Below are positions 1 to 43,419 of a stretch of DNA of 64,000 nt, piece by piece (within the stretch, counting starts at the first letter, position 1; each line of letters opens with the position of its first letter). Made by a program: the position numbers and the translations under genes. Location: NCBI GenBank assembly GCA_002269645.1, contig NIVC01001745.1, positions 1 through 64,000 of the forward strand. The letters are read 5' to 3'. The stretch is from Macrostomum lignano (Eukaryota). The notes beneath the pieces are model-generated. The model was not told where the DNA came from. It searched no databases and was given only the letters and a program-made list of their open reading frames with translations.

Positions 1-3000
1 CTCCAGCTACCCTCCTTTAGCTACCCTCCTCAGCTACCCTCCTCCAGCTACCCTCCTTCAGCTACCTCCTTTAGCTACCCTCCTCTAGCTACCCTCCTCC
101 AGTTTATCCTCCTCCATCTACCCTCCTCCAGTTTATCCTCCTCCAGCTACCCTCCTGCAGCTACCCTCCTCCAGCTACCCTCCTCCAGCTACCCTCCTCC
201 AGCTACCCTCCTCCAGCTACCCTCCTCCAGCTACCCTCCTCCAGCTACCCTCCTCCAGTTACCCTCCTCCAGCTACCCTCTTCCAGCTACCCTCCTCCAG
301 CTATACTCCTTCAGCTACCCTCCTTTAGCTACCCTCCTTTAGCTACCCTCCTCCAGCTACCCTCCTCCAGCTACCCTCCTCTAGCTACCCTCCTTCAGCT
401 ACCCTCCTCCAGCTACCCTCCTCCAGCTACCCTCCTTCAGCTACCCTCCTCTAGCTACCCTCCTTTAGCTATCCTCCTCCAGCTACCCTCCTCCAGCTAC
501 CCTCCTCCAGTTTATCCTCCTCCAGCTACCCTCCTCCAGTTTTTCCTCCTCCAGCTACCCTTCTCCAGTTTATCCTCCTCCAGCTACCCTCCTCCAGTTT
601 ATCCTCCTCCAGCTACCCTCCTCCAGTTTATCCTCCTCCAGCTACCCTCCTCCAGTTTATCCTCCTCCAGCTACCCTCCTCCAGTTTATCCTCCTCCAGC
701 TACCCTCCTCCAGTTTATCCTCCTCCAGCTACCCTCCTTCAGCTACCCTCCTCCAGCTACCCTCCTCCAGCTACCCTCCTCCAGCTACCCTCCTCCAGCT
801 ACCCTCCTCCAGCTACCCTCCTCCAGTTACCCTCCTCCAGCTACCCTCCTCCAGCTACCCTCCTTCAGCTACCCTCCTCCAGCTACCCTCCTTTAGCTAT
901 CCTCCTCCAGCTACCCTCCTTTAGCTACCCTCCTTTAGCTACCCTCTTTCAGCTATCCTCCTTCAGCTATCCTCCTTCAGCTACCCTCCTCCAGCTACCC
1001 TCCTCCAGTTACCCTTCTCCAGCTACCCTCCTCCAGCTACCCTCTTCCAGCTACCCTCCTCCAGCTACCCTCCTCCAGCTACCCTCCTCCAGCTACCCTC
1101 CTCCAGCTACCCTCCTCCAGCTACCCTCCTCCAGCTACCCTCCTCCAGCTACCCTCCTCCAGCTACCCTCCTCCAGTAACCCTCCTCCAGCTACCCTCCT
1201 CCAGCTACCCTCTTCCAGCTACCCTCCTCCAGCTACCCTCCTCCAGCTACCCTCCTCCAGCTACCCTCCTTTAGCTACCCTCCTCCAGCTATACTCCTTC
1301 AGCTACCCTCCTCCAGCTACCCTCCTTTAGCTACCCTCCTCCAGCTACCCTCCTTCAGCTCCCCTCCTCTAGCTACCCTCCTTCAGCTACCCTCCTCCAG
1401 CTACCCTCCTTTAGCTATCCTCCTCCAGCTACCCTCCTCCAGCTACCCTCCTCCAGTTTATCCTCCTCCAGCTACCCTCCTCCAGTTTATCCTCCTCCAG
1501 CTACCCTCCTCCAGCTACCCTCCTCCAGTTTATCCTCCTCCAGCTACCCTCCTTCAGCTACCCTCCTCCAGCTACCCTCCTCCAGCTACCCTCCTCCAGC
1601 TACCCTCCTCCAGCTACCCTCCTCCAGCTACCCTCCTCCAGCTACCCTCCTCCAGTTACCTTCCTCCAGCTACCCTCCTCCAGCTACCCTCCTCCAGCTA
1701 CCCTCCTCCAGTTACCCTCCTCCAGCTACCCTCCTCCAGCTACCCTCCTTCAGCTACCCTCCTCCAGCTACCCTCCTTTAGCTATCCTCCTCCAGCTACC
1801 CTCCTTTAGCTACCCTCCTTTAGCTACCCTCTTTCAGCTATCCTCCTTCAGCTATCCTCCTTCAGCTACCCTCCTCCAGCTACCCTCCTCCAGTTACCCT
1901 CCTCCAGCTACCCTCCTCCAGCTACCCTCTTCCAGCTACCCTCCTCCAGCTACCCTCCTCCAGCTACCCTGCTCCAGCTACCCTCCTCCAGTTACCCTCC
2001 TCCAGCTACCCTCCTCCAGCTACCCTCTTCCAGCTACCCTCCTCCAGCTACCCTCCTCCAGCTACCCTCCTCCAGTTTATCCTCCTCCAGTTTATCCTCC
2101 TCCAGTTTATCCTCCTCCAGTTTATCCTCCTCCAGCTACCCTCCTCCAGTTTATCCTTCTCCAGCTACCCTCCTCCAGTTTATCCTTCTCCAGCTACCCT
2201 CCTCCAGTTTATCCTTCTCCAGCTACCCTCCTCCAGTTTATCCTCCTCCAGCTACCCTCCTCCAGTTTATCCTTCTCCAGCTACCCTCCTCCAGCTACCC
2301 TCCTCCAGTTTATCTTCCTCCAGCTACCCTCCTCCAGTTTATCCTCCTCCAGCTACCCTCCTCCAGTTTATCCTTCTCCAGCTACCCTCCTCCAGTTTAT
2401 CCTCCTCCATCTACCCTCCTCCAGTTTATCCTCCTCCAGCTACCCTCTTTCAGCTACCCTCCTCCAGCTTCCCTCCTCCAGCTTTACCCCTTCAGCTAAT
2501 CTCCTCCAGCTACCCTCCTCCAGCTACCCTCCTTTAGCTACCCTCCTCCAGCTACCCTCCTTCAGCTACCCTCCTCCAGCTACCCTCCTTCAGCTACCCT
2601 CCTTTAGCTATCCTCCTCCAGCTACCCTCCTTTAGCTACCCTCCTTTAGCTACCCTCTTTCAGCTATCCTCCTTCAGCTATCCTCCTCCAGCTACCCTCC
2701 TTTAGCTACCCTCCTCCAGCTACCCTCCTCCAGCTACCCTCCTTCAGCTACCCTCCTTTAGCTACCCTCCTCTAGCTACCCTCCTCCAGTTTATCCTCCT
2801 CCATCTACCCTCCTCCAGTTTATCCTCCTCCAGCTACCCTCCTGCAGCTACCCTCCTCCAGTTTATCCTCCTCCAGCTACCCTCCTCCAGTTTATCCTCC
2901 TCCAGCTACCCTCCTCCAGTTTATCCTCCTCCAGCTACCCTCCTCCAGTATCCTCCTCCAGCTACCCTCCTTTAGCTACCCTCCTTTAGCTACCCTCTTT

Positions 3001-3508
3001 CAGCTATCCTCCTTCAGCTATCCTCCTCCAGTTACCCTCCTTTAGCTACCCTCCTCCAGCTACCCTCCTCCAGCTACCCTCCTTCAGCTACACTCCTTTA
3101 GCTACCCTCCTCCAGCTACCCTCCTCCAGCTACCCTCCTCCAGTTTATCCTCCTCCAGCTACCCTCCTCCAGTTTATCCTCCTCCAGCTACCCTCCTCCA
3201 GTATCCTTCTCCAGCTACCCTCCTCTAGTTTATCCTCCTCCAGCTACCCTCCTCCAGCTACCCTCCTCCAGCTACCCTCCTCCAGTTACCCTCCTCCAGC
3301 TACCCTCTTCCAGCTACCCTTCTCCAGCTACCCTCCTTCAGCTACCCTCCTCCAGCTACCCTCCTTCAGCTACCCTCCTCCAGCTACCCTCCTCCAGCTA
3401 TCCTCCTCCAGCTACCCTCCTTTAGCTACCCTCCTTTAGCTACCCTCTTTCAGCTATCCTCCTTCAGCTATCCTCCTCCAGCTACCCTCCTCCAGCTACC
3501 CCCTTCAG
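1..3508. repeat. 14-bp minisatellite (CCTCCAGCTACCCT and variants), ~250 copies; probably intronic in the C3orf20-like gene
   Basis: Continuous 14-bp periodicity with variants such as CCTCCAGTTTATCCT and CCTTTAGCTACCCT; blocks of variants recur (e.g. ~50-150 and ~2750-2850). Confidence 0.98.
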
Positions 3509-3646: not shown

Positions 3647-6416
3647 GAGCACCGGCAATGGCAGACGCCCGCTTGTCTGGAGGAGAGCCGGCGGCGCCAG
3701 GCGGAGGACGCCGAGCGCGAATCGCGCCGCGCCGCCCAACGCGCCGAGAATGACAGCCTGCTGATGCGCGACGGTTCCCGCTCGCGGATGTCCCGGACCG
3801 CCTCAGCCTCCGGAGACGCCGCCGACCGGCGCACTGTCCGCCTGAGCCAGGCCTCAGCAGCGCCGACAGCGGCAGCGGCGGCGGCGTCCGTCAAGAAGTC
3901 GGCCCGCTCTCGCGGCGGCGCCCTCCAAGAGCAGGCCATCGCCGAGGGGCCCGAGCACTCTACCGGAAATCCGGCAAAATCGGCCGACCACCACCCGACA
4001 GACACCCTGTCTTTCTCGCTGGTGTCCAAGGAGTCGCTGAAGAACGGCTGGCTGCAGAATTTCAATCAGCGCCTGATTGAAGACAAACTGCAGAGCGCGC
4101 TGGTCAAACTGAGGCTGGCCGGACACGCGCCTGGGTCTGTCCCAACTGGCCTGTCTGTCCCAACCGGCCTGTCTGTCTGGCCTGTCTGTCCCACCTGGCC
4201 TGTCTGTCTGGCCTGTCTGTCCCAACTGGCCTGTCTGTCTGGCCTGTCTGTCCCAACTGGCCTGTCTGTCTGGCCTGTCTGTCCCAACTGGCCTGTCTGT
4301 CCCAACTGGCCTGTCTGTCCCAACCGGCCTGTCTGTCTGGCCTGTCTGTCCCAACCGGCCTGTCTGTCTGGCCTGTCTGTCCCAACCGGCCTGTCTGTCT
4401 GGCCTGTCTGTCCCAACTGGCCTGTCTGTCCCAACTGGCCTGTCTGTCCCAACTGGCCTGTCTGTCCCAACTGGCCTGTCTGTCCCAACTGGCCTGTCTA
4501 TCTTGTTAGCCGGTCTGTACTAAGCAGAAAAGGATAAACTCAATACATTTTCCATCTCATTAGGAATCGAACCACGGACCAGCACCTGCAGCAGCAGCAG
4601 CTGGAGCTGCAGTTCTACGCAGCCGGGGCCCCGTCCTACCGGCCGCCGCGACCCCGCCGGCTCCAGCCAGCCGAGCTGGTGGACCCCGACACCCTGCTGC
4701 CCAGGCCAGTCGCTCCGCCCGACGTCAGCGCCAAGCGGGCCTTCGCCGATCGTCTGGTCGAAGCCGCCGCCGCTGTCGCCTCAGCTTCATCGTCCGGGCC
4801 ATCGGGGCTCCCCCTCCTGACCGAAGACGAGGCCCGGCTGCTCAGGCGGCGCTTCAAGACCGACTGGCCGGCCATGCGCGAGGCCGTCCTGCAGGCGATG
4901 CTGGCGCCGCCGCCGATGCCGGCAAAATCTGCGGCGCATCAGGCGGCCGCCGCCGCCGCCGCCGCTGCCGCCGCGAGCACCTCGGAGGAGTCGGCGCTGA
5001 ACAACCTGCTGACCGTCGAGTTGCCATCTCGCTACAGCAGCCTCGGCGGTGGACGCCTCATCCAGTGCCGCCTGCCAGACGGTGGCACCGTCGTGCTGTA
5101 CCCGTCGGGCAGGCCGGCGCTGCTCGCCTGCGGCTGGTCGGGTGCCGTTGTGGCCCTGAACGACTCGCTGGAGCGTCAGGGCAGCCACCTGCTTGCGAGC
5201 GTCACCGCGTCCGCCTGCGGCTTTGTGCGCTCGATGGATCCGACAGAGCCGACGTTCACTTGCACCCAGGCTGTGGCCCAGCTGCAGGTGCGCCGGGATG
5301 TCAGATTTTAAGTTTTGGAATATTTTTAGATCGAGGTTGAAGTCAGTAGCTTCAAATTGCTCATCTGAGACCCAAACCCCCTGTTTGGATCAGGGAGGGT
5401 GGCTCAGCAACTGAGGATTTGGGAGGCTGGCCCAGCAACTGAGGATCTGGGAGGCTGGTGGTCCAGCAACTGAGGATCTGGGAGGCTGGTGGTCTAGCAA
5501 CTGAGGATCTGGGAGGCTGGGGTGGGTGGCCGAGTCTACGCTTGGCAATTTTTCTGTATGCAGGCCAAGCAAAGCTGCTGAAGTCCAAGTACCCCTCCCC
5601 TAACCGCAGGACCCCCTGACCGGCCGGGTGCTGAAGCGGCTGGCCTGGCCCTCGGATCCGCGAGCCAAGCTGCCAATCAATCTGCAGGTGCGCCTGAACT
5701 CCTGCCTGACATTCGTGTGCTCGGGCCGAGCTGACATGACCTTCGCGTTCCAGGCAGAGGGTCGCTCTGCCCAGCTGGCTGTCGGCTTCTGCGCCGAGCG
5801 GGAGGCGGCCGTCAGGCAGCGGTGCATCGATCGCCATGGCAACCCGTTGGTGAGACGTCCGAAAGTTTACGGGGTTGACTTTCCGAGGTGTTTGAAGTCC
5901 CATTTTACAACATAGAAGTTCCACTTTGATTTGACAGTTTGTGGGTCACTGATTTATGTCTGCCTCATGTACATGATGTATCCCTAATATATGTCAGCCT
6001 TTATGTATTTTTAATCAAGGTTCTTCATCTCTGGCTCTGCATTTAAAGCGTTCGTAAAGAAAAACCTAGTAAGGCTTTGATTCTGATGAATTTTCACTGT
6101 CTAAAAATTGGTTTCACTGTCAGTTTTTATCTGTTTGTGTATTCACAGCGTCTAACGAGCAACTACCTGTGTTCACACTGCTGTCGCCAGCTGTCATATT
6201 GTTAACTTTATAGTATGTACATGCAAAAGTACATTTCATTGGAAGAGCATAGTGCTGTTAGTGCATGGTTAACACAAAAGTACATGACGCACTTCTCCCC
6301 CATATATAAACAGATTGGACTCAGCGAATCGCTGAAAATCGACGGAGATAAAGAAACGGTGCTATGGAAGTCTGAGACAGCAAAGCGGCTGGTTGCAAAA
6401 GCGAAGCAGATGCGAA

Positions 6417-6455
<39 letters not shown>

Positions 6456-9074
6456 TGCAATATCAGCTGGCCAGAAGACCGGCGGTAAGACCAATTTAGT
6501 GCAGAAGTCGCTCTGTGATATGAAACTTTAAAAACGAATGCGATTAAAGGATTTGTTAAATGATATCAAAGAAATAAACTTGCATTTTTATATAGGTGAG
6601 GGAAAATGTCGGATTGGCTAATGTACATTGTCAGGGGAAGCAAAGTATCGGAGTAACCAATGTACATTGCTTGGGGGGAAGAAAAATACGGAGTGGCCAA
6701 TGTACATCGCTAGGGGGGGAGAAAAAATATCGGAGTGGTCAATGTACCTTGCTTGGGGGAAGGAAAATATAGGAGTGGCTAATGCACATCGCTAGCGGAA
6801 AGAAAAAGAAGAGTATTTGAGTCAAGAACTTGTGTTTTAGGAAGAGAAAGAGAACAAACCAAGTAAATAGCTAAGTGGAAAAGTAAAATTTGAATGAGTA
6901 CGGGAAATTAGTCAACACTTTTCCCGAATCCGTCATCACTAAGGACTCCGCCAAGTCCGGCGCCACAGAGTTCTCAGCCGCGTCTTCCGGGGGAACTGGC
7001 AGCGGTGGCAGCGGCAGCGACTTGACCGTGAGAGACTCGGACCTCGAGGAGACTCGAGCTCGAATTCGCGGCATCTGTGATTCCTGGCTAGAGGCATACA
7101 GGCAGCGCCTGGGTGTCGCTCCTCCAGCACCGCCGCCACCGTCGCAGCCCCAGCAGCTGCCGCTGTCATCGAGGACGCCGAGGCCGGTTCAGTCGGCCGC
7201 CCCGGCGACGGCTCAGCGCAGCTCCACCGCGGGACGGCGCTCCGTCCAGGCGCCGCCGCGGTTGCCCTCGGCGCCACCGACTGCCGCGGCTGGCGTCGGC
7301 GTCGGCGCGCTTCGACAGTCGGCGCCAGCGGCGCCATCGACTGCGACGAGCGCCACAGCGGCGGCGTCGGCCAACTCCCTGGCCGAAGCCCTGGAGTGTG
7401 CGGCGTGTCCGACCACAGCCAGGCAGCTGCTGATCGCGGCGGGGGCTGCTGGCGGAACTTCCGGCTTTGTTGGCTTGAATCGATGCGGATGCGGCCTTCA
7501 GGTGAGCCTAGCAAGCGTTTCTGTGCGCTTCCCTCTGCTATCCAATGTGTGGAACTGCTTCCCTCCGCTATCCAATGTGTGAAACCGCTTCCCTCCGCTA
7601 TCCAATGAGTGGAACTGCTTCCCTCCGCTATCCAATGTGTGGAACTGCTTCCCTCCGCTAGCCAATGTGTGGAACTGCTTCCCTCCGCTATCCAATGTGT
7701 GGAACTGCTTCCCTCTGCTATCCAATGAGTGGAACTGTTTCCTTCCCCTTTCCAATGTGTGGAACTGCTTCCCTCCGCTATCCAATGTGTGGAACTGCTT
7801 CCCTCCGCTATCCAATGTGTGGAACTGCTTCCCTCCGCTATCCAATGTGTGGAACTGCTTCCCTCCGCTATCCAATGTGTGGAACTGCTTCCCTCCGCTA
7901 TCCAATGTGTGGAACTGCTTCCCTCCGCTATCCAATGTGTGGAACTGCTTCCCTCCGCTATCCAATGTGTGGAACTGCTTCCCTTCGATAAATAATGTGT
8001 TAAAATTTTTCCCTCCGCTCTCCACTGTCTCACCGTCTTCACCCTAAAGGTCCCCAGCCTGACGGACCTCGAGCTCGACGCGTTCATCGAGGCGCAGGGC
8101 CGGCGAAATCCCGATCAACTCTTGGTTGTCATGGTAACGCACTCCAATTCCGACTCGTCAGAGGCGGCGCGCCGCGCCGATTCCCTGCTGCGCCAGTACG
8201 CCTCAGCTAATAGAAATCGGCGCCGCGGCGCCACGGCGCCCTGTCTGGTCGCGGCGCGCGACAATTTTCGAATGCTGGCCTACGACCTGGGCGCCGCTGC
8301 GGCCACCACGGCGTGCACCTATCCGGAGCTGTTGGTGCGGCACAACCTGCGGGTTGGGGACGCTCTGGTGTACCGGCAGGGCCGCATCATGTTCGCTGGC
8401 GCGCTCGCCGGGCCCGAGCAGCTGCGGCGCCAGCTGGCCGAGTGCCGGCGCCTCGGGCAGCGCGGCTGTCCGGGCCTGCCGCGCGACTTCCGGCTGTCCA
8501 CTTCTGCCTGGGATTGCCGCCGGGAGGATCCGGCGAGTGAGACGGCCGCTTTGATTGGCGGCGTTGCCATGGAGACGGGAACAAATAGGTTAGTTAATAG
8601 TGCAGTAAACGCGATTCACAGCCATGAGGCCCAACCCCAGGGCACAGAGAGTGTACATGCCTGACGGTTAGAAAGTCAGGACCGCTGTACACTCTGTGTG
8701 AGCGCGTGTATGACTGCGTGCCTGCGTACAGCATTCGAGCGCTTGTGTGTGCTCAGGAGTCTCAAGAGAATTGGGCAGAATTGTGCCAGGGGGGGGGGCA
8801 TAACCCTCTTGCGAACATTTATTTCTTTGTATACTACATTTAGCTCGTAAGTTAGGTGACTGTTGTCAATTCTTGGCCACCTTTTGTCGAAAGCTTTCAG
8901 TAAATGAGAAGTATTTGTACTCTATGAACTTGAAATAGATAGACTGAAATGTAGAAAGGGAGTGAAACGTTTTGTAATTCGCATTGCAGAGCGGTCACAC
9001 TGGATGCTCTGACTGTGCTGTCAGCCAGCGACAATCACCCGATGCTGTCTTGCGGTCTGCCGAAAATTCGATGA
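3647..9074 (+). CDS. C3orf20: C3orf20-like FAM194-domain protein, multi-exon, 5' partial
   Basis: Phase-consistent exons 3647-4134, 4564-5287, 5610-5849, 6314-6484, 6841-6862 (tentative), 6912-7501, 8050-8588, 8990-9074 (tentative). Motifs VLYPSGRPALLA, KRLAWPSD..LQVRLNSCLTFVC, VPSLTDLELDAFI and FRMLAYDL..LLVRHNLRVGDALVYRQGRIMFAG recall FAM194/C3orf20 proteins. Family recognised from memory, no search run. Confidence 0.7.
4135..4499. repeat. Intronic 18-bp minisatellite (CTGGCCTGTCTGTCCCAA) starting at the splice donor
   Basis: Direct periodicity; the first unit overlaps the GT donor at 4135. Confidence 0.95.
5395..5522. repeat. Intronic ~29-bp minisatellite (CAGCAACTGAGGATCTGGGAGGCTGG..), same family as 19322-19585
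   Basis: About four near-identical units with the same core at both loci. Confidence 0.9.
6612..6800. repeat. Degenerate ~40-bp intronic tandem repeat (GGAGTGGCCAATGTACATYGCT..GGGGG..AAAA)
   Basis: About five diverged copies containing AATGTACA. Confidence 0.8.
7535..8020. repeat. Intronic 30-bp minisatellite (TCCAATGTGTGGAACTGCTTCCCTCCGCTA)
   Basis: About 16 copies; explains the repetitive ORFs at 7498-8087. Confidence 0.97.
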
Positions 9075-9680: not shown

Positions 9681-10708
9681 CAGCACCTCTACCTACAGCT
9701 TTCGTTGGCAGTTTTATATCAATCAATTTTTTTCTGATGCATACCACTTCTAGTTTATTGTTGTTGTGATTTTATCATAATAATAAACAATTATCAATTT
9801 TTAAACTTCCATTTTTAATGATACAAAGCAAATTTTTGCGTTCTATTTGCTGCTGACATAGAAACGAGTTCCTATATTTTTCCCCGAATCAATTGTAACG
9901 AGTAAAAACTGCCTGGATAAATTGCCCTTTGCATTGAAATTACATTTCCTCTGATACAAATATCTTCCAGAAAATGAACAACTGTTATATTTTTAATGTT
10001 ACTTTATTGCTGCTCAGTCGTTATCTATGAATCACATGGATGATATTTTATGTTTTATCAGATTCTTTTAACTCACGAACTCTTGGATTCCTGCCCAACA
10101 CTTTACTGTCAGTCCACTTTAATTGAGTTTCATGTTGTTTAAATTAAATAAACTGCAAAATTAACTAATAAGAAATTTGCACAGATATGGTCAGGCTTTA
10201 TGACGTCAGTTTCTTTTTTGAGAAATACAAGAAATAAAAAAATAATAATATCGCGGAGTTTAGCAAAAAGTTCTCTAGAAAAGAAGCTATTATACATGGA
10301 CAGACAGAAAACTTTCTAACGCTCGCGTGGAAATAATAAAGACTCAAAGTGTCTGAAAATCTCTCCATGACAGTCAGTATTTTTGTTAATATGAAGCTGG
10401 ACTCTACAGATTTTCATCTTCATCGCATCACCAGCCAGTTGTTGTACTCCATTCCCCGCTTCGCAGTTGGTCGCCTATTGGTGTCTGAAAGTCGTGTGGG
10501 TTAATTTTACGATGTCAGAATGCCAGACAGAAGGCTGCTAAGTTTAAAACTGTGGTTGAAATTTTTTCTTTGTTTTAATGCGTGACTAAAATATATTATG
10601 CCAGTTATTACATCATTAGATGAATGATAAAATAGCCAAGTAAATTGCAAAATAATGTTTTCATAAAATTGGGGCTATAAATACTTCTTCCTGCGATATA
10701 CGGACGTC

Positions 10709-10938
10709 GACTAAGAAAGACAGGGGAGCTGAGGTGACTCAGACCTCGTGGACTAAGAAAGACAGGGGAGCTGAGGTGACTCAGACCTCGTGGACTAAAA
10801 AAGACAGGGGAGCTGAGGTGACTCAGACCTCGTGGACTAAGAAAGACAGGGGAGCTGAGGTGACTCAGACCTCGTGGACTAAGAAAGACAGGGGAGCTGA
10901 GGTGACTCAGACCTCGTGGACTAAGAAAGACAGGGGAG
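10709..10938. repeat. 42-bp tandem repeat, ~5.5 near-identical copies
   Basis: GACTAAGAAAGACAGGGGAGCTGAGGTGACTCAGACCTCGTG repeated head to tail with no spacers. Confidence 0.97.
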
Positions 10939-11769
10939 TACATATATTCGATGTACACTCAACAGCCGGCAGGAGACGAGATTGGCCCACCCCCAGGGCA
11001 CCGAATATGTACACTCTCTGACAAAGCGAAAGTCGGGACAGATGTACATACACCCATGGGCGTGTTTGTGCTCTGGGGTTAGTGGAATATGCCTGCTTTT
11101 TAATTGCCTCTCATCGCTTGAGCCAGCACCCAAAGGCACAGCCTCCCTTAAAATTACAAAAGTAATAACTAATGGCGTATAGAGAGCGTATATAAAATAT
11201 GATTTACAATGTACACTCAATGTACACTGAATGTACATTCACCAGCTGGCGTGCAGTGACCAGAAAAGGCCATGTATAGTTAATAAATTTATAAATATTG
11301 GCGTAAGCCTCCTTTAACCAATCAGATCCTAAGTAGTATATGCCAAAATTGTTAATAAGTTATATATGCTATTCATAATTGTATGTTAAAAGCTGTTCTG
11401 AATAGTCCAGTACAACTTGTACCCGAGAGGAATCCAGTCGAGTTTTTAGTTAGAATATCAAATACGAAGTGTCGTATTTCCTGGCTCGACTCGCGGTCTC
11501 TGCTGCTTCGTTGGCTGATTGAGCAAATGACGTGGAGTGTTTGAATCTTTAAAATAACGCTTGATAATTGAGGTTGAACCAATGCTTCTACCAATGACCA
11601 CCATCTGAAAGACAATACTTACTGTGCCCATCTACCCCGCCAACTATGACCACAGCATCTCGGCTCAGTTAGGACACAAGGACAACTTAAGTAGAATATA
11701 TATGTTACTTGAGTAGTCCTTGTTAGGACGGATACCCGACTCCCAACCCTTCTGCACCAGTCAGGCACG

Positions 11770-12365
11770 GACCAACCAAAACACCCTTCTGCCCCAGGCC
11801 CTCAGTCAGGCACGGACCAACCAAAACACCCCTCTGCCCCAGTCAGGCAAGGACCAATCAAAACACCCCTCTGCCCCAGTCAGGCAAGGACCAATCAAAA
11901 CACCCCTCTGCCCCAGTCAGGCACGGACCAACCAAAACACTCCTCTGCCCCAGTCAGGCACGGACCAATCAAAACACCCCTCTGCCCCAGTCAGGCACGG
12001 ACCAATCAAAACACCCCTCTGCCCCAGTCAGGCACGGACCAATCAAAACACCCCTCTGCCCCAGTCAGGCACGGACCAATCAAAACACCCCTCTGCCCCA
12101 GTCAGGCACGGACCAATCAAAACACCCCTCTGCCCCAGTCAGGCACGGACCAATCAAAACACCCCTCTGCCCTAGTCAGACACGGACCAATCAAAACACC
12201 CCTCTGCCCCAGTCAGGCACGGACCAACCAAAACACTCCTCTGCCCCAGTCAGGCACGGACCAACCAAAACACTCCTCTGCCCCGCCAGGCATGGACCTC
12301 CAACCCCCAACACCTTTGCCCCAGTCTGTCATGGACCTCCATCCCCAACACCTCTGCACCAGTCT
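11770..12365. repeat. 37-bp minisatellite (CAGTCAGGCACGGACCAATCAAAACACCCCTCTGCCC)
   Basis: About 15 copies, degenerate at the ends. Confidence 0.95.
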
Positions 12366-12412
12366 CCCAGTCTTTTGCCAACCCCTTCTCAACCACTACC
12401 CCCGCCAATCAC

Positions 12413-15400
12413 CATAGGCCTGCTGGCGGATCCGTTCAGTGGCGGCGTTGGCAACCCGCTGCTGTTGCTGGCGGTGCTGGTCCAGAAATCCGGGCTGCAG
12501 AGCCAGTTGTCGCCTGTAGGCATCGGCCATTGACACTTGACCTGCGCAATCGGATGGGGGTTGGTTGGCTTTGTAGAAACTTGGGAAGTTACGGCAGCAG
12601 CTCAGAGCAACCCAGGGATTTCACAGTCTCACCATCCAAAAACTGCGTCCTCTGTCCGTCTGGCTGCATGGCGAATTTCAGGTGTCGCCAAGTGGATCCG
12701 CCCTTGCCGTTGCGCAGTCGCGGCTGCTGCCTGCGGGAGGCGGATTTGCAGTGGCGGGCGGGTGCAAGGACGCGAAATCGGAAACTGGCGGAGATAGCGC
12801 TCACGCATAGAGTGAGGCTTCAAAGTGCGAGGGGATTGGCGAATAACAAGCGACTAGCAAAGTTAACAAGACGAGGCGCCCCGAGCAGACCAGTGGCCCA
12901 CAGAGTTCAGCCTGTGAGCTCGAGTTCAGCTCTCCCGAGCCGCTTTGTGCTGGGCCGGTCCGGCCGGATCCCGCTAGCGCAGCCCGACACCGGAGCCCGC
13001 GGCCTGCCGCCGAAGGATGGAACTGGACGCCGACAGTGCGCGCGACAGCCGCCGGGTGCCAGAGAGAGCGGCTGGCCAGTGGGCAGCTTCGCCAGCCGTG
13101 GACGGCATCCGTGATGAGCGCCGGCGGTAGGACTGCAGACTCCGCGGACTCCGGCCAGCCGCGGTCGGCGGTGCTGCAGCGCGGAACAGCCGGAGGCCGG
13201 AGCGGCTCGGAGGTCCGGCTTCGGTGCCGCGGACTTGGCCGGTGCTCCGTCGGCTCCCAGCGACTGCCGCGGGTCAGGCCGGGCCCAGCCGGGCCGCTCG
13301 GCCGCCCGCCGCCCAAACGGCCGACTCGGAATGAGCGGCTGCGGCTGCGGCTGACAGAAATGTCGGCGCGGCAGGCAGGCAGGCAGGCAGGCGGTCGGGT
13401 GGCCGCAAGAGGCTCAAGGCTGGAGAGCGCGACAGCCCGCCCGGGCCGGGGCCCGAACGGCCGCCCCCGACGGCCGTCCGACACGGCAGCGCAGGCCCGG
13501 GCGGACGGCCGGCGGAGTACGGCCGCTGGGAACCGGCCGCGGACGGGAGCCTCGCAATCCGGCCAGGTCCGAACGGCCGGCCGAACGCCGGGCAGCCAGC
13601 GACCCGGCCAGTAGCCGGCCCGTCCCGCCGCAGCCGCCGAGCAGCCTCTGGAGCTCCTGCCTGGACCGCCGCTCCGATGGCGGACCTCCGCGCCGCTCCG
13701 ACCCCCAGCTGTACTGCGCCGCAGCTCCGCCGGCTGTGGCTAGTCGAAGTCGCGGCGTCCAGAATCCAGCCGCCGGATGCTGTCCCGGACGCCGGCCTGG
13801 GCCAGCGAAGTGGTCCACCGGCCAGTCGCGCTCTCAAGCGACCAGAGGCGCCGCGGCGCAACGTCGGAGCGCGGCACCTCCCAGACGGCTGCAGACCGCG
13901 GGACCGGCGCGGGCTGCACTGCGGCCGCAAGCGGGACCGGCGCGGTCGGTCCGCACAGCGGCGCTGGGAGACGAACCCGGCTATGGCTGCGCTCTGAGCC
14001 AAGGTGTCAGCGGTAAATCCTGCCTTGCACTTGGCAAGCTAGTCGCCCACTGAGCCAACCTGCAAACCACCTTGACAGCCCTACAAAGTTGGCGCTTTGC
14101 CGCCCCTGTTTCAGTCCCGCGTCCTTGCACCCGCAACAAACAGAATAGAGGTGGATGTTGGCTTATACAGTGAGGAACGAATCGCAAACTCTAAATAGGG
14201 TTTGTTTCGCGACTCGCCTACTGTAAGTATGAGTGGCAGCGTTTTAGCAATAGAGAAGGTGGCTGTGAACGCCGCCGCTCACCGTTCGGTTTGAGGCGGC
14301 CGGCTCTGCTTCAGGTAGGCCTTGTGGGCGTCGTCGTAGCCGTGGGCTCGGGGCCGAACTGCAGGTGCAGCGGCGGATTCTAGAAAAATAGAATGATGAA
14401 GCATTAGCTACTCGTAAATGATACATGGAGACTTACTTAAACTGGGTATAGCGGATATTTTTGTTGTTTTATCCACTACCTTCTGTCTGTCTCTCCGAAA
14501 AGCAAAGGATTGAACGCAAAGACTGGTTTTAATGCCTGGGCTACATTTTCCCGTAGCAACTAGCCTACTGCCGAGCTCGGGCCAGAAGTGAAATGGTCGG
14601 TGATCTCTCTCGGACCGATGCGCGAGTGTATTTGACTTTGTGGGGAGAGAGAATGAAAGATCTTAGCTCTCCTCCATTTTACTGTACGCCTTGTCACGGG
14701 CTGGGGGTGGCAGTGGTCACGCTACCACACAGCCACGCAGCAGGCGCGTGTCGCACTTTTATCGCGCGACCTACACAGTCATTCGTGCAGGGGTGGCATA
14801 TCAGCATTTGAACGCTGAACTAGATTTATAATGATGTATTTGTCACAAATAAGACAGAGAGAGAGAGACAGATAAGCAAGCGACAGAAATAAGTCACGTG
14901 ACAAGGCCAGAGAGAAAAATAAGTCACGTGACAAGGCCGAAGAGAAAAATAGGTCACATGACAAGGCCGAAGAGAGAAATAAGTCATATGACAAGGCCGA
15001 AGAGAGAAATAAGTCATATGACAAGGCCGAAGAGAGAAATAAGTCATATGACAAGGCCGAAGAGAGAAATAAGTCACGTGACAAGGCCGAAGAGAGAAAT
15101 AAGTCACATGACAAGGCCGAAGAGAGAAATAAGTCACGTGACAAGGCCGAAGAGAGAAATAAGTCATATGACAAGGCCGAAGAGAGAAATAAGTCATATG
15201 ACAAGGCCGAAGAGAGAAATAAGTCACGTGACAAGGCCAAAGAGAGAAATAAGTCACGTGACAAGGCCGGAGAGAAATAAGTCACGTGACAAGGCCGAAG
15301 AGAGAAATTAGTCACATGAAAAGGCCGGAGAGAGAAATATGTCACGTGACAAGGCCGGGAAAGGTAAATCATGTCACACGGCGCTGATTCATACCTGATC

Positions 15401-16167
15401 GTGCGGCCTCGGCGACGGCAGGATCGGCAGTTTGGGCACCGCCGCGGTCCTCTGCTCGGCCGGCTGGGCCAAGTCCTCCGCCCGGTAGTTGACGCCGTGC
15501 CGGTTGCGGTCCCGCTCAGTCATGCACTGCCGCAGCTCCCTGTACTGCGGGTAGTCGGGCATCACGGCGCACGGACTGACCAGCCGTTGCAGCCCGTCGC
15601 CAGCTTCGTGCAGCTGCTCCTCCTCGGGCACAGTCTGGCAGCCGCGCTGCGAAGCCTTCAGAAATTTGGCTCCGGGACCGGGCGGCTGGCGGTCCGTTGT
15701 CACGGCAACTAGGTGACTCTCGGTGTCCTGATAGCCGGACAGATTGTGACCGGACAGCTCCGAGTGCAGCCAGTGGTGCATGGAGCCATAGCTAGTGCTG
15801 TGGGTCAGAGTTGGAAGAATTTGCTTGTGGCTGAATCCTGCTGCACTTTTATTAGTCTCGCATTTCTCAGAAAGGGTGCAGCACTGAGGCAATGTCCAAC
15901 TCTTTCCAACTCTTTCCCAGGTATACGTACAAGTCACCCCCCTGAAAGAGTCCTGTTCTTCCCTGCTCTGTACTCAAATTCATAGCTCGTACCTGTTGTC
16001 ATGGAAACCAGTTCCTCTGTACTCTCGGACAGACATATTGTCTAGCCCCCGCAAGCACAAGCGCTTAATGAATATACAGAACGTCATATCGTTTTATACT
16101 ATTTTAAGCATAAAATATAGGACCAGTTAACTAACATGTTAAGCTATTCGTTCAAATCATACGAGCC

Positions 16168-16244
<77 letters not shown>

Positions 16245-16320
16245 GCAATACTCACCGATTCCTAGTGTGCCGTCTGCCCAGCGGGTAGCGCGGCTTTCCC
16301 AGAGCGTCCAGCGCGGCCAT
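12413..16320 (-). CDS. Uncharacterised multi-exon protein (>=290 aa), 3' end unresolved
   Basis: Phase-consistent exons (minus): 16320-16256, ~16012-15988, 15797-15395, 14482-14437, 14379-14283, 12730-12633, 12541-12413. They give an open frame MAALDALGKPRYPLGRRHTRNRGTGFHDNSTSYGSMHHWLHSELSGHNLSGY...HGYDDAHKAYLKQSRPP...STWRHLKFAMQPDGQRTQFLDGQVSMADAYRRQL. No family recognised. Confidence 0.7.
12758..14134. other. GC-rich long imperfect inverted repeat (fold-back); arms ~12758-13335 and ~13555-14134
   Basis: Perfect 17-bp terminal IR (GCGGGTGCAAGGACGCG / CGCGTCCTTGCACCCGC); the arms align colinearly by eye at roughly 65-70% identity. Confidence 0.85.
14885..15360. repeat. Intronic 30-bp minisatellite (AAGTCACGTGACAAGGCCGAAGAGAGAAAT)
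   Basis: About 16 copies. Confidence 0.97.
16169..16243. repeat. (GATA)n microsatellite, intronic
   Basis: Direct reading. Confidence 0.98.
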
Positions 16321-18097: not shown

Positions 18098-21000
18098 TCA
18101 AGCCCAAACAAGCGACAGAGCCAACACTAACAAAGAGGGCAATGTGACGCATTCCTGTGCTGCAGTTGCACTTCGGCCAGCTGCACTGGTGGTGGTCATC
18201 GGCATGCTGGTGCTGGCGGTGCTGCTGCTGCTGCTGTCGCTGCTCAGCATTGCGCTGAAGTGCTCGCTGCTGCCGTTGTTCGGCTGAGGCCGAATGCCGA
18301 GCAGGTGGCACATCAGCCCGTAGATGTCCACCTGTTTGGTAGCAGAGAGCAGGGTGGAACGGACTGCCGCTGGGATATTGGCTGGGACATTGGTTGGGAT
18401 ATTGGCTGGGACATTGTCTATGACATTGGCTGGGACATTGTCTATGACATTGGCTGGGACATTGGCTGGGACAGTGGCTGGGATATTGGCTGGGACATTG
18501 GCTGGGAAATTGGCTGGGAAATTGGCTGGGATATTGGCTGGGACATTGTCTATGACATTGGTTGGGATATTGTCTATGACATTGGCTGGGATATTGGCTG
18601 GGACATTGTCTGTGACATTGGTTGGGATATTGGCTGGGATATTGGCTGGGACATTGACTGGGACATTGGCTGGGACATTGGCTGGGATATTTGCTGGGAC
18701 ATTAGCTGGGACATTGTCTGTGACATTGGTTGGGATATTGGCTGGGATATTGGCTGGGACATTGGCTGGGATATTGGCTGGGACATTGGCTGGGACATTG
18801 AGTGAGATATTGACTGGGATATTGGCTGGGACATTGGCTGGGATATTGGCTGGGACATTGGCTGACTGTGACGCTAACGTATATTTTAACCACGAACATA
18901 CAGTAAGCTACTGCACCCATACCGGTGAAATTTTAGCAAAGAATTCAATTAGCTACGTGCATTATGAATGCACTATGAAAAGAAACGCACCCAGTGCACC
19001 AAAGGGACCAGATGGCAGACATTTGTATTACCCCCAAATGCCATTTCGAACTTTGCGTTTGGAAACGAAAATAACAAATCGTTCAGGGCTTAGCTTGATG
19101 TCATATGAAAGGGCACTAGGAGCTTTCCCCTATCATTTGCAGACATTCAAGACATTAATATATATATTCATGCCCGTTTAAAATGAAAAGCTTTTCAGCA
19201 GTACAAAAAATTTAGCAGTAGAAAGACGTAACCTATCAAAATAAAAATATTTGTATTCGCTAAAAGTTTAATATTTTCTAAGAAAATGAATTCCCACGTC
19301 CTTCTTGAGCTGTCCATGCTGACGATCTGGGAGGCTGGCCTAGCAACTGAGGATCTGGAAGGCTGGCCCCAGCAACTGAGGATCTGGGAGGCTGGTCTAG
19401 CAACTGAGGATCTGGGAGGCTGGCCCAGCAACTAAGGATCTGAGAGGCTGGACCCCAGCAACTGAGGATCTAGGAGGCTTGCCCAGCAACTGAGGATCTG
19501 AGAGGCTGGGCCAGCAACTGAGGATCTGGGAGACGGGCCCGGCAACTGAGGATCTGGGAAGCTGGCCCAGCAACTGGGGATCTGGATGGAGAGCGGCGGT
19601 GGCCCAGCAGCTGAGTCATCCTTGGCAGGACCCAGCAACAAACCTGTCGGAAACCTTCCACCTCAACACCGCGACGGAAGCTGGGTCCGACCGCTATTAG
19701 CGGCACCTTCATCTCGTCGTAGGTATTGTCGAATCCGTGATTCCCTTTGATCAAGTTGGTAGATCGGCGGAACACCACGTAACCGGGATCCGGCAGCACC
19801 AGGACGTCCGGGATGCGACGGTGCTGCGAGTACCTGTAGGCTGGCGGCATGGACTCGCGGGTGAAGACGCGGACAGGCAGACTCCTGGCTTTGGTCTGGT
19901 TCTGCAGGAACTCCACCAGCCGGTCGCGCTGGCCCGGCTTGGCGAACATGCTGAGCAGCGGCCCGCTGTCCATGTAGCGGTCCACGAAGGGGTCCAACTC
20001 GTTGTTGAAGTGGATGGCTTTGCTGTCGTTCAGTTCCGTCATGCCTGCGGGCCGGACCCGATGCCAGAGAGATGAAAATAGTGATTGGTGACCCATAACG
20101 CCCCAGACTTTGGGAAGCCATAGCAACCCACTTGACGCTTAATCCTGACCAATACGCTCGGAAAAGAGAATAACTCTGGAGAATAAATAAAAGAGAATAA
20201 ATGGCACACCTGAGAACGAACTGACGTTTTTAACAGCCTTGAGTTCGGCGCCTAACAGACATACAGACAGACAGACAGACAGACAGACAGACCGACAGCC
20301 AGACAGACTCACCATGATCAGAGGTGATAATAATGTCAACGCGATCCCGCACTCCCCGCCTCTCCAGTCGGTACACCAGCAGCTCAAGCAGGTGATCCAG
20401 CCTGATGATAGCATCGGACACCCGCACCGATTCCGGGCCGCTGCTATGCCCGGCAGAGTCCGGCTCGTTAAAGTACAGGGTGCACAGGTCGATCTGCTCG
20501 TCGGCCAGCCAGGAGGTGATGGTGTCGATCCGGTACTCGTAGCTGATTCTGCCATCGTACGGGAAGTAGTGATCAGGCCGGGTGCCGCCGAACTCGACTT
20601 CGCTGCCCGGCCAGAAGAACGTCGCCGTTTTGAGTCCCTGACGCTTGGCCGTCACCCAGATTGGCAGAGAATCGTTCCACCAGCGCTCCTCCCTGGTGCT
20701 CATGCCAAAGGTGGCGTTGAACACCGGGTCGTACATTCCGTTGCTGACGATCCCGTTGCTCTCCTGTGGATGCGCGAATTCAATTAGAGTTATTGTGCTC
20801 ACCTGACAACAGGTGAGCATAGTACCATACACAACAGGTGAGCATAGTACCATACACAACAGGTGAGCATAGTACCATACACAACAGGTGAGCATAGTAC
20901 CATACACAACAGGTGAGCATAGTACCATACACAACAGGTGAGCATAGTACCATACACAACAGGTGAACATAGTACCATACACAACAGGTGAACATAGTAC

Positions 21001-22255
21001 CATACACAACAGGTGAACATAGTACCATACACAACAGGTGAACATAGTACCATACACAACAGGTGAACATAGTACCATACACAACAGGTGAGCATAGTAC
21101 CATACACAACAGGTGAGCATAGTACCATACACAACAGGTGAGCATAGTACCATACACAACAGGTGAGCATAGTACCATACACAACAGGTGAGCATAGTAC
21201 CATACACAACAGGTGAACATAGTACCATACACAACAGGTGAACATAGTACCATACACAACAGGTGAGCATAGTACCATACACAACAGGTGAGCATAGTAC
21301 CATACACAACAGGTGAACATAGTACCATACACAACAGGTGAACATAGTACCATACACAACAGGTGAACATAGTACCATACACAACAGGTGAACATAGTAC
21401 CATACACAACAGGTGAACATAGTACCATACACAACAGGTGAGCATAGTACCATACACAACAGGTGAGCATAGTACCATACACAACAGGTGAGCATAGTAC
21501 CATACACAACAGGTGAGCATAGTACCATACACAACAGGTGAGCATAGTACCATACACAACAGGTGAGCATAGTACCATACACAACAGGTGAACATAGTAC
21601 CATACACAACAGGTGAGCAAAGTGTCATACACAACAGGTGAGCATAGTACCATACACAACAGGTGAGCATAGTACCATACACAACAGGTGAGCATAGTAC
21701 CATACACAACAGGTGAGCATAGTACCATACACAACAGGTGAGCATAGTACCATACACAACAGGTGAACATAGTACCATACACAACAGGTGAACATAGTGC
21801 CATACACAACAGGTGAGCATAGTACCATACACAACAGGTGAGCATAGTACCATACACAACAGGTGAGCATAGTGCCATACACAACAGGTGAGCATAGTAC
21901 CATACACAACAGGTGAGCATAGTACCATACACAACAGGTGAGCATAGTGCCACCAACAAATGACGTCTCTCACCTGATGCAGGCCAGTGGCAATCACCCA
22001 GTGATTCGGGAAGGTCTTTGTCACAAACTCAGTCTGCATAGAGCGAACAAAGACTCCTTCGCTGGCCATCTGGCGCAGGAACCGGGACTGATTGGCGTAG
22101 ATAGTCAAATAGTCGTGACGGAATCCGTCCAGGGACACCAGAAGCAGCTGACGACGACTCGCTCGGCTGATTCTTGGCGAGGCTTGCGCAACCAGAGCCA
22201 GAGTCGATAGCAGCAACAGTGGAAGCAGAGTCTGCAACAATAAGTTCGGCTGCAT
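18098..22255 (-). CDS. Ectonucleotide pyrophosphatase/phosphodiesterase, ENPP4/ENPP5-like, with signal peptide and probable GPI anchor
   Basis: Exons 22255-21974, 20763-20313, 20044-19644, 18331-18098 join in phase. Motifs LLVSLDGFRHDY, TKTFPNH (catalytic Thr), TFFWPGS, LYFNEPDSAGH, IITSDHGM and GNHGFDN are present, with a hydrophobic N-terminus and C-terminal LLVLALSLVWA. Confidence 0.95.
18370..18864. repeat. Intronic 12-bp minisatellite (TGGGAYATTGGC)
   Basis: About 41 copies. Confidence 0.97.
19322..19585. repeat. Intronic ~29-bp minisatellite (CAGCAACTGAGGATCTGGGAGGCTGG..)
   Basis: About nine copies; same family as 5395-5522. Confidence 0.93.
20807..21950. repeat. Intronic 25-bp minisatellite (AGGTGAGCATAGTACCATACACAAC)
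   Basis: About 45 copies filling ENPP intron 1. Confidence 0.98.
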
Positions 22256-42882: not shown

Positions 42883-43419
42883 CCAAAACAGATCTGCTGG
42901 AGCTTCAACTGCAGCCGAGAGCGCCTCGTGAAGAATTGAATTGCGTTTTTTTCATATTTCATATTTTGGTTATGCTTATGCAATTTTATACATTAATTAA
43001 TATTCCTACTGATGAAGACTGCTTCTGCTAGTTTATGAATTTAAGAACCCTCTGTTCAGTAGCAATTCATGTTTAGTCCATATGTTAGTCTTGAATATTA
43101 AGCTTAACGTATGTCCATGTTCCATATTTATGAATTTATGAATTTCAACATTTGTTGCATGTACTGCTCTCAATAACTCTTCACGCATAGTACACCTTTT
43201 CAAGTTCAATTTCGATCGGGGTCCAGTTCTGAAACAACTAGCGGAAATTCAATTCAGACTGAGGATAATTTTGTCTATGGCTAAACCTTACTTCGGTCAG
43301 AATGTTTTGAGCTGGGGTTAGACTGGGCCCAGTCTAAATTGTCTGAATTGAATTTCCGCTGGTTTTTTTGGAACTGGACTTTGATCGGGATTGAACGTGA
43401 AAAGGTGTAGAAAATTATT

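What the first reader, a model, noticed from the sequence alone, without database searches (positions are those of the whole stretch)
12758..14134. 1.4-kb GC-rich intronic fold-back: candidate hairpin-RNA (endo-siRNA) locus or splicing-bridging structure
Two ~580-bp arms are inverted copies at roughly 65-70% identity by eye, around a ~220-bp loop, with a perfect 17-bp closing stem. The element fills most of an intron (12731-14282) of the minus-strand gene, ending 27 nt from the acceptor and ~150 nt from the donor, so pairing would shrink the effective intron to under 200 nt. No conserved reading frame between the arms and no TSD were found. A rough hand tally suggests about twice as many transition mismatches are G-U compatible on the minus (host-transcribed) strand as on the plus strand. 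That bias is expected if an RNA duplex is under selection, as in Drosophila hpRNAs. Its sequence is far more complex than the simple repeats in neighbouring introns.
Basis: partly seen in the sequence, partly recalled or inferred. Interest (0 to 1): 0.75.

Follow-up and report, generated by a model that had tools for sequence, protein, structure and literature searches.

The report
Decayed GC-rich fold-back in flatworm intron
A 1.4-kb GC-rich inverted repeat really does fill most of one intron of a Macrostomum lignano gene and would fold into a long imperfect hairpin in the pre-mRNA, but it looks more like an old passenger insertion than a small-RNA gene, and two oddities (perfect 17-bp ends, G-U-friendly mismatches on the transcribed strand) remain unexplained.

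Summary
Arms 12758-13331 and 13567-14134 are inverted copies, about 72% identical. Their alignment score is 202, against at most 49 in shuffles. The ends are a perfect 17-bp inverted repeat.

The element lies in intron 4 (12731-14282, GT..AG) of a minus-strand gene. The exons match Macrostomum lignano proteins A0A1I8IHH3 and A0A1I8GU20 at 100%, and the protein reads straight across this junction.

The strand bias is real. There are 54-58 mismatches that are G-U compatible on the minus strand, against 20-22 on the plus strand (p about 1e-4), and this holds across alignment settings.

The duplex is poor: 85 helices with a mean length of 5 bp, and only two of 20 bp or more. No gene, protein family or RNA family matches the arms. 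No second copy and no target-site duplication were found.

General transcription-linked mutation bias does not explain the asymmetry, because minisatellite variants and unique introns nearby are symmetric. The central region is also T-rich on the sense strand.

Best reading (about 0.55): an old fold-back insertion carried passively in the intron. A selected intron-bridging hairpin (about 0.2) and an siRNA hairpin (about 0.07) are not excluded. Genome-wide copy number and small-RNA data could not be reached with these tools.

The parts
12758..14134 (-). Whole fold-back element: 1377 bp and 72% G+C overall, rising to 69-78% in 300-bp windows across 12901-14100. It is transcribed as part of the host pre-mRNA (sense strand = minus).
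12758..12774 (.). Left terminal inverted repeat, GCGGGTGCAAGGACGCG, perfectly complementary to 14118-14134.
   Evidence: It occurs only at these two places in the window (0.1 expected by chance). It is the longest perfect run in the arm alignment (17 bp; the next is 10).
14118..14134 (.). Right terminal inverted repeat. On the minus-strand RNA the closing helix extends to 20 bp through two G-U pairs and one A-U pair.
12775..12900 (.). Left subterminal segment. It pairs poorly with 13997-14117 (~54% identity) and has about 56% G+C.
   Evidence: (global score reached by 10 of 1000 shuffles)
12901..13331 (.). Left core arm, 73.5% identical to the reverse complement of 13567-13996, 75% G+C.
13332..13566 (.). 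Central region ('loop'), 78% G+C. It holds (GCGGCT)3 at 13335-13353 and (GGCA)5.8 at 13370-13392. It also holds a nested local hairpin covering about 13417-13566 (RNA fold z = -3.4). The sense strand has T=37 and A=15.
   Evidence: (I2, I5)
13567..13996 (.). Right core arm.
13997..14117 (.). Right subterminal segment.
12731..14282 (-). Intron 4 of the host gene (1552 nt, GT..AG). There are 148 nt of unique sequence between the donor and the element, and 27 nt between the element and the acceptor.
14283..14379 (-). Host exon 4 (residues ~179-211, KSAAAPAVRPRAHGYDDAHKAYLKQSRPPQTE-).
12633..12730 (-). Host exon 5 (-RQQPRLRNGKGGSTWRHLKFAMQPDGQRTQFLD-).
10423..16320 (-). Host gene, encoding Macrostomum lignano uncharacterized protein A0A1I8IHH3 / A0A1I8GU20. 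Exons: 16320-16255, 15796-15397, 14637-14569, 14379-14283, 12730-12633, 12541-12414, and an alternative last exon 10485-10423. No Pfam domain.

Best explanation
The element is an old, decaying GC-rich fold-back insertion. It is either a non-autonomous TIR-type mobile element of an undescribed family or a one-off inverted duplication of foreign GC-rich DNA. It now rides passively in intron 4 of an uncharacterized Macrostomum lignano gene.

Shown: the inverted repeat, its position, the splice junction and the strand bias.

Inferred:
- When the host gene is transcribed, the element is copied into the pre-mRNA on the minus strand.
- There it collapses into a long but heavily interrupted hairpin. 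As a side effect, this brings the two intron ends to within about 175 nt of each other.
- The hairpin is removed and degraded with the intron.
- The 2.5-fold excess of G-U-compatible mismatches on the sense strand is best read as an excess of C-to-T changes on the non-template DNA strand of this GC-rich, structure-prone segment, not as proof of selection on the RNA duplex.
For: - The repeat is real but degraded: 72% identity, about 0.35 substitutions per site between the arms (my Kimura two-parameter estimate from the counts), and many indels.
- The predicted sense RNA has 85 arm-to-arm helices with a mean of 5.3 bp.
- Its G+C (71-78%) is foreign to the surrounding introns (39-54%). That points to an insertion, not a local duplication.
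- It has TIR-like perfect 17-bp ends.
- It has no coding content and matches no known RNA: Pfam found nothing for 13 ORFs, Rfam found nothing, and one ORF had no relatives among 1.84 billion representative proteins.
- It shows no similarity to the host CDS.
- More than half of the M. lignano genome is repetitive, and a 1.55-kb intron is of average size there (PMC5730564).
- The sense-strand T-over-A excess is also present in the central region (37:15) and in the poorly paired subterminal parts (67:42). It is therefore not restricted to arm-arm pairs.
- Part of the sense strand's folding advantage comes from base composition alone: shuffled sequences already favour the minus strand by 27.5 +/- 10.6 kcal/mol, against 53 observed.
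Against: - There is no target-site duplication at the termini.
- There is no second copy in the 64-kb window or in 21 kb of another M. lignano locus. Mobility is therefore not shown.
- Perfect 17-bp ends next to ~54%-identical subterminal sequence are unexpected under uniform neutral decay (0.72^17 is about 0.004).
- The transition asymmetry is not a general property of the region. Polarised minisatellite variants in minus-transcribed arrays are symmetric (G>A 25 against C>T 25 unique events), and unique introns of the host gene have almost no T/A skew (+0.038, not significant). An element-specific cause has to be assumed.
- In well-aligned columns the transversions are symmetric (7 against 7) while the transitions are not. 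Selection for G-U pairs also predicts this.
- About two thirds of the 'loop' is itself locally paired, so it is an imperfect unpaired control.
Confidence: 0.55

Rival explanations
1. A selected pre-mRNA structure. The hairpin, and above all its 17-20-bp closing stem, is kept because it sequesters 1.4 kb of GC-rich intron. This brings the 5' splice site (148 nt outside the stem) next to the branch-point and acceptor region (27 nt outside), so the intron splices like a ~175-nt one.
For: - The closing stem is perfect over 17 bp and reaches 20 bp on the sense strand only. It is the longest perfect run by far, and it persists when the whole intron is folded.
- Mismatches favour the sense strand 54-58 to 20-22, robustly, while well-aligned transversions are symmetric.
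- Nearby controls show no general mutational asymmetry.
- The sense RNA folds 53 kcal/mol better than the antisense, about 2.4 sd more than composition alone gives.
- An A-rich stretch lies ~15-17 nt upstream of the acceptor, outside the stem.
Against: - Introns of this length are the norm in M. lignano, so no bridging is needed.
- The 28% mismatches and numerous indels show that most of the duplex is not under effective constraint.
- The T-over-A excess extends to the central region.
- No comparative data could be obtained.
- The strength of the bias is the same in well-paired and poorly paired columns, although power is low.
Confidence: 0.2
2. A young copy of an active or recently active TIR transposon. 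Its consensus would have perfect 17-bp ends and intrinsically imperfect internal arms, so the arm divergence and its strand asymmetry would predate the insertion.
For: Perfect termini contrast with 54-73% internal identity. The G+C is foreign to the intron. CpG observed/expected is 1.03, so there is no CpG decay, and transitions are not enriched at CpG (34% against a 36% background).
Against: A young insertion should have an intact TSD, and none is present. There is no second copy or second TIR match in 85 kb of M. lignano sequence. There are no tandem subrepeats in the arms. There is no transposase remnant.
Confidence: 0.12
3. A hairpin-RNA locus. The excised intron, or an independent transcript, is diced into endo-siRNAs that silence a gene or repeat elsewhere in the genome.
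For: The long fold-back is transcribed in a defined orientation. The sense strand is favoured by G-U-compatible changes. M. lignano has Dicer, an expanded Argonaute set and RdRPs (PMC4604429 and PMC5594548).
Against: - Only two helices of 20-21 bp exist, and the mean helix is 5.3 bp.
- At 72% arm identity with many bulges, the duplex is far below the near-perfect duplexes of known hpRNAs (own knowledge of Drosophila hpRNAs).
- No target-like third copy is present in the window. There is no similarity to the host CDS or to any protein.
- The M. lignano small-RNA study searched (PMC4604429) mentions endo-siRNAs only as background and hairpins only for miRNA precursors (term search).
Confidence: 0.07

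Closest known systems
Drosophila hairpin-RNA (hpRNA) endo-siRNA loci, such as hp-CG18854 and hp-CG4068 (own knowledge)
   Same: A long inverted repeat transcribed from one strand, predicted to fold back on itself. G-U-tolerant divergence on the transcribed strand is the expected signature.
   Different: Known hpRNAs have highly complementary arms and recognisable homology to a target gene. Here the arms are ~72% identical, broken into 5-bp helices, and match no gene. Small RNAs were not testable.
Foldback (FB) transposons and long-TIR non-autonomous DNA transposons / MITEs
   Same: Two long inverted arms around a non-repeated centre, TIR-like perfect ends, no coding capacity, intronic location, and composition foreign to the flanks.
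   Different: There is no target-site duplication. The arms have no tandem subrepeats, whereas FB arms are built of them. No further copies were found in the sequence available. At 1.4 kb the element is larger than typical MITEs.
Intron-bridging ('zipper') stems, such as the yeast RP51B intron and the complementary AC/GT-repeat ends of zebrafish introns (own knowledge)
   Same: Complementary segments placed just inside the donor and just upstream of the branch-point/acceptor region would shorten the effective intron from 1552 to about 175 nt.
   Different: In those systems the pairing has been shown to matter for splicing, or recurs in many introns. Here it is a single case in a genome where 1-1.5-kb introns are normal, and no functional or comparative evidence is available.
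Introner-like elements (intron-generating transposons)
   Same: A TIR-bearing insert makes up most (89%) of a spliceosomal intron.
   Different: Both splice sites lie in unique flanking sequence, 27 and 148 nt outside the element. No TSD-derived splice site is present and no family of copies is seen.

Membership tests
hpRNA / endo-siRNA hairpin locus | Long, nearly perfect intramolecular dsRNA (arms highly complementary over hundreds of bp) | tested here: not met
   72.5% arm identity with many indels. The sense-strand MFE structure has 85 arm-arm helices with a mean of 5.3 bp; the longest are 21, 20, 14 and 12 bp.
hpRNA / endo-siRNA hairpin locus | Arms homologous to a target gene elsewhere (a third copy) | tested here: inconclusive
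   No third copy in the window. No similarity to the host CDS. No Pfam hit. No relatives of the 242-aa ORF among 1.84 billion proteins. The whole genome could not be searched.
hpRNA / endo-siRNA hairpin locus | 21-22-nt Dicer-dependent small RNAs from both arms | not testable with these tools
   No read data are accessible. A term search of PMC4604429 found endo-siRNAs only in its introduction and hairpins only for miRNA precursors.
hpRNA / endo-siRNA hairpin locus | Transcription of the fold-back on one defined strand | tested here: met
   The element lies inside intron 4 of a gene whose annotated protein maps at 100% to the minus strand across the junction.
Foldback (FB) transposon | Long terminal inverted arms built of tandem subrepeats | tested here: not met
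   TRF at minimum score 30 finds only three short arrays (19-23 bp), all in or beside the central region (13335-13591), and no subrepeat structure along the arms.
Foldback (FB) transposon | Target-site duplication flanking the element | tested here: not met
   The left flank reads ...GCAGTGGCGG and the right flank AACAAACAGA..., with 1 of 10 matches. Only a trivial 'GC' inside the palindrome could be read as 2 bp.
Foldback (FB) transposon | Multiple dispersed copies in the genome | not testable with these tools
   None in the 64-kb window or in the 21-kb locus L001. The M. lignano assembly is not searchable here.
MITE / non-autonomous TIR DNA transposon | Terminal inverted repeats | tested here: met
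   Perfect 17-bp TIRs.
MITE / non-autonomous TIR DNA transposon | Superfamily-specific TSD | tested here: not met
   No direct repeat at the ends.
Intron-bridging structure | Stable pairing between a site just downstream of the 5' splice site and a site just upstream of the branch point/acceptor | tested here: met
   A 17-bp perfect stem (20 bp on the sense RNA) lies 148 nt from the donor and 27 nt from the acceptor. 15 of its 17 pairs are kept in a fold of the whole intron plus exon flanks.
Intron-bridging structure | Pairing required for, or improving, splicing; conserved by compensatory change | not testable with these tools
   No orthologous or homeologous locus could be fetched. No expression data are available.
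Introner-like element | The element supplies or abuts the splice sites and fills essentially the whole intron | tested here: not met
   The splice sites lie 27 and 148 nt outside the element, in unique sequence.

The most novel reading that the evidence does not exclude
The fold-back is under RNA-level selection in the host pre-mRNA. Its perfect 17-20-bp closing stem and its sense-strand-specific G-U tolerance would be maintained for one of two reasons: the hairpin bridges the splice sites of a GC-rich intron, or it feeds a flatworm endo-siRNA/dsRNA pathway. In the second case it would be the first hairpin-RNA-type locus described in a platyhelminth.
Probability: 0.2. Interest if true: 0.55.

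Novelty: new member of a known kind. Interest (0 to 1): 0.3.

Why it matters
If the element is only a decaying insertion, it matters little. Intronic inverted repeats are common, and more than half of the M. lignano genome is repetitive.

Its value is as a clean, testable case. It combines a single-copy-looking fold-back, a defined transcription direction, a statistically solid strand asymmetry of mismatches, and an unexpectedly perfect closing stem. It sits in an organism that has transgenesis, RNAi, Dicer, many Argonautes and RdRPs.

With existing small-RNA and RNA-seq data plus the duplicated genome copy, one could decide quickly between RNA-level selection and strand-specific deamination of structure-prone DNA. 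The same question applies to G-U-bias arguments for hairpin loci in general.

Tried and rejected
1. Transcription-associated mutation bias as a full explanation of the G-U asymmetry. Polarised minisatellite variants in minus-transcribed arrays are symmetric, and unique host introns have no T/A skew. A general bias is therefore rejected, and only an element-specific one remains possible.

2. My first 'control' was an apparent transversion asymmetry (38 against 17, from the counts). It came from the poorly aligned central part. In the arms it is 26 against 14, and in columns flanked by matches 7 against 7. I dropped it.

3. Arms derived from the host mRNA. A weak tblastn match of the host protein to the translated right arm (33% over 76 aa, E=0.003, no composition correction) is not supported at the nucleotide level: 34 of 200 shuffles score as well. 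It is compositional.

4. Fetching the homeologous or paralogous locus. P0002 is not on record with a contig. The cluster has only two UniRef entries, both mapping to this window. The neighbouring plus-strand gene has no relatives in the database at all. The ENPP neighbour finds only a 53% paralogue at a non-syntenic locus.

5. RNAduplex between the intron ends of the other host introns, to ask whether end-pairing is general. The 250-nt forced duplexes were uninformative.

6. Bacterial or plasmid origin of the 76% G+C block. There was only a 61-bp chance match.

7. Known RNA families. Nothing reached the gathering score, and there were two chance-level hits at E of about 0.8-0.9.

8. Assembly artefact (a missed-adapter palindrome). 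Rejected because the element is flanked on both sides by correctly oriented exons of one gene, and its differences are mostly substitutions.

9. circRNA-promoting inverted repeats. Rejected because both arms lie in the same intron.

10. Methyl-CpG decay. Transitions are not enriched at CpG, and CpG observed/expected is 1.03.
Full report
**What is there.** The region 12758-14134 is a genuine fold-back.

- A Smith-Waterman alignment of the left half against the reverse complement of the right half scores 202. Direct, reverse-only and complement-only comparisons score 28-31. Two hundred dinucleotide shuffles give a mean of 27 and a maximum of 39, and 100-bp block shuffles a maximum of 49.
- blastn of the element against the whole window finds only itself and the arm-arm pair (E=4e-37, 71.6% over 363 bp), apart from a 35-bp simple-repeat match.
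- A global alignment gives arms 12758-13331 and 13567-14134, 72.5% identical over 549 aligned columns.
- The structure has four zones:
  - perfect 17-bp termini;
  - ~125-bp subterminal segments that are only ~54% identical and barely significant (10 of 1000 shuffles);
  - ~430-bp core arms at 73.5% identity and 75% G+C;
  - a 235-bp central region.
- All zones share one symmetry axis to within 5 nt, so they belong to one structure.
- The central region is not a simple loop. It carries two microsatellites and a nested ~150-nt hairpin (z = -3.4).
- The arms contain no tandem subrepeats.

**Where it is.** The window comes from the flatworm Macrostomum lignano.

- A composite of the open frames flanking the element hit UniProt A0A1I8IHH3 at E=1.6e-148.
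- That 290-aa protein, and its 307-aa cluster-mate A0A1I8GU20, map exon by exon at 100% identity to the minus strand. The exons are 16320-16255, 15796-15397, 14637-14569, 14379-14283, 12730-12633 and 12541-12414, with an alternative last exon at 10485-10423.
- The protein reads ...PPQTE-R-QQPRL... across 14283|12730, with GTGAGC and CCCGCAG at the intron ends.
- The host protein has no Pfam domain and no relatives outside M. lignano.
- The neighbours are an ENPP-type phosphodiesterase, Rpp20, PEN-2, RPL13A, lysyl-tRNA synthetase and an EGF/laminin-G gene.

**The strand bias.** I classified each transition mismatch between the arms by the strand on which it would still form a G-U pair.

- The minus (sense) strand wins 58 to 22 over the whole alignment and 54 to 20 in the arms (p=1e-4).
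- The result survives five scoring schemes (39-57 against 17-28) and restriction to columns flanked by matches (20-24 against 9-11).
- Both arms contribute: 31 and 23 derived bases.
- The sense RNA folds to -931 kcal/mol and the antisense to -878. Both are far below shuffles (-742 and -715; z = -18 and -13).
- Shuffled sequences already favour the minus strand by 27.5 +/- 10.6 kcal/mol from composition alone.

**What the bias means.** In a GC-rich palindrome, every 'minus-strand G-U' mismatch is equally a C-to-T change on the minus DNA strand. The bias therefore cannot by itself separate RNA-level selection from strand-specific mutation. I tried several controls.

- Against a general transcription-linked bias:
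  - Polarised variants in eleven minisatellites of minus-transcribed units are symmetric. There are 25 G>A against 25 C>T unique events, at per-site rates of 0.27 and 0.32.
  - The 2.3 kb of unique intron sequence in the host gene has a sense T-A skew of only +0.038.
- Against pure pairing selection:
  - The sense-strand T excess is strongest in the central region (37 T against 15 A, p=0.003) and in the poorly paired subterminal segments (67 against 42).
  - The ratio is the same in well-paired and badly paired columns.
  - The duplex has accumulated about 77 transversions and dozens of indel columns.
- An apparent transversion asymmetry that I first took as a control disappeared in well-aligned columns (7 against 7). 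That is neutral between the two readings or slightly favours selection.
- Transitions are not concentrated at CpG (34% against a 36% background), and CpG is not depleted (observed/expected 1.03). Methyl-CpG decay is therefore not the cause.

On balance the asymmetry is real and specific to this element, and its cause is unresolved.

**Is it a small-RNA hairpin?** The anatomy argues against it.

- The sense-strand MFE structure has 85 arm-to-arm helices with a mean of 5.3 bp. Only two reach 20-21 bp.
- Nothing suggests a target:
  - there is no third copy in the window;
  - there is no significant similarity to the host CDS;
  - there is no Pfam family in 13 ORFs;
  - there is no Rfam family;
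  - the 242-aa sense ORF has no relatives among 1.84 billion representative proteins.
- M. lignano does have the machinery: Dicer, many Argonautes and RdRPs (PMC4604429 and PMC5594548).
- The passages retrieved from the M. lignano small-RNA study concern miRNAs and piRNAs only. Endo-siRNAs appear there only as background.

**Is it a splicing bridge?** The geometry fits.

- The closing stem is perfect over 17 bp and extends to 20 bp on the sense RNA only.
- It keeps 15 of 17 pairs when the whole intron is folded.
- It would leave about 175 nt between donor and acceptor.
- A 17-bp perfect run beside ~54%-identical sequence is unexpected under uniform decay (about 0.004 even at 72% identity). The next longest run is 10 bp.
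- Against this, the mean intron in this genome is 1.1-1.4 kb (PMC5730564), so no special device is needed. I could obtain no comparative or expression evidence.

**Is it a transposon?**

- For: TIR-like ends, no coding capacity, and G+C of 71-78% inside introns of 39-54%.
- Against: no TSD, no subrepeats, and no other copy or TIR match in 85 kb of M. lignano DNA.
- Genome-wide copy number is the key missing datum. It could not be reached, because the protein look-ups that might have led to the duplicated locus all failed.

- The most likely account (about 0.55) is an old fold-back insertion carried passively in the intron. Its hairpin forms by default in the pre-mRNA, and its mismatch asymmetry reflects extra C-to-T change on the non-template strand of a structure-prone GC-rich segment.
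- A selected intron-bridging or self-sequestering hairpin (about 0.2), a young TIR element with intrinsically imperfect arms (about 0.12) and an siRNA hairpin (about 0.07) remain open.
- It is a new example of a known kind of feature. It is of modest interest, mainly because the competing explanations can be separated cheaply with existing M. lignano data.

Noticed in passing
window 60735-61738: A second inverted-repeat element: 203-nt arms (60735-60937 and 61536-61738), 95% complementary, 598 nt apart. An ORF across the interior and right arm (61154-61537) matches the Mos1-type transposase HTH domains (HTH_48, HTH_32). It looks like an internally deleted mariner-like transposon, young compared with the intron-4 fold-back.
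   Followed up: partly
window 43191-43409: A compact hairpin-type inverted repeat: 69-nt arms, 86% complementary, 81 nt apart, directly upstream of a 32-bp minisatellite (43431-44075). Not examined further.
   Followed up: no
whole window, e.g. 1-3501, 20806-21952, 49622-51793: Minisatellite density is extraordinary. About 40 distinct arrays give 55 TRF rows at score >=200. Examples are a 14-mer repeated 248 times at 1-3501 and a 30-mer repeated 73 times at 49622-51793. Several host-gene introns carry one of their own. This agrees with the 15% simple/tandem repeat content reported for M. lignano (PMC5730564).
   Followed up: partly
window 3900-8700, plus strand: Segments with strong coding potential (3905-4129, 4796-5308, 5607-5831, 7999-8142, 8242-8574) look like one plus-strand multi-exon gene. 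A 443-aa composite found no relative at E<=1e-5 among 5.8 billion clustered proteins, and one segment had no Pfam domain. It appears to be an unannotated orphan gene.
   Followed up: partly
window 12399-12541 and 10423-10485: The host gene has alternative 3' ends. A0A1I8GU20 splices from 12414 to an exon at 10485-10423. A0A1I8IHH3 ends in 'VHEV', from an exon I did not locate. Read-through of the 12414 donor would end the protein at a TAG at 12399-12401 (...QQAYGDWRG*).
   Followed up: partly
window 12758-14134 versus 15797-16254 and 10939-11745: CpG observed/expected is 1.03 inside the fold-back and 0.94 in exon 2, but 0.60-0.74 in AT-rich intron sequence of the same gene. This is a compositional contrast of unknown cause.
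   Followed up: no
window 18098-22200 (minus) and L001: The ENPP-type phosphodiesterase gene next to the host gene is only 53% identical to its closest database relative, a M. lignano paralogue at a different, non-syntenic locus (with a MatE gene downstream). The window's own ENPP copy, like the host gene, is absent from the NCBI protein set.
   Followed up: partly
window 13574-13798, plus strand: The translated right arm shows 33% identity over 76 aa to host-protein residues 133-206, which span three exons (tblastn E=0.003, without composition correction). It is not supported at the nucleotide level and is probably Pro/Arg/Ala-rich composition. A real match would have implied derivation from the host's spliced mRNA.
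   Followed up: yes
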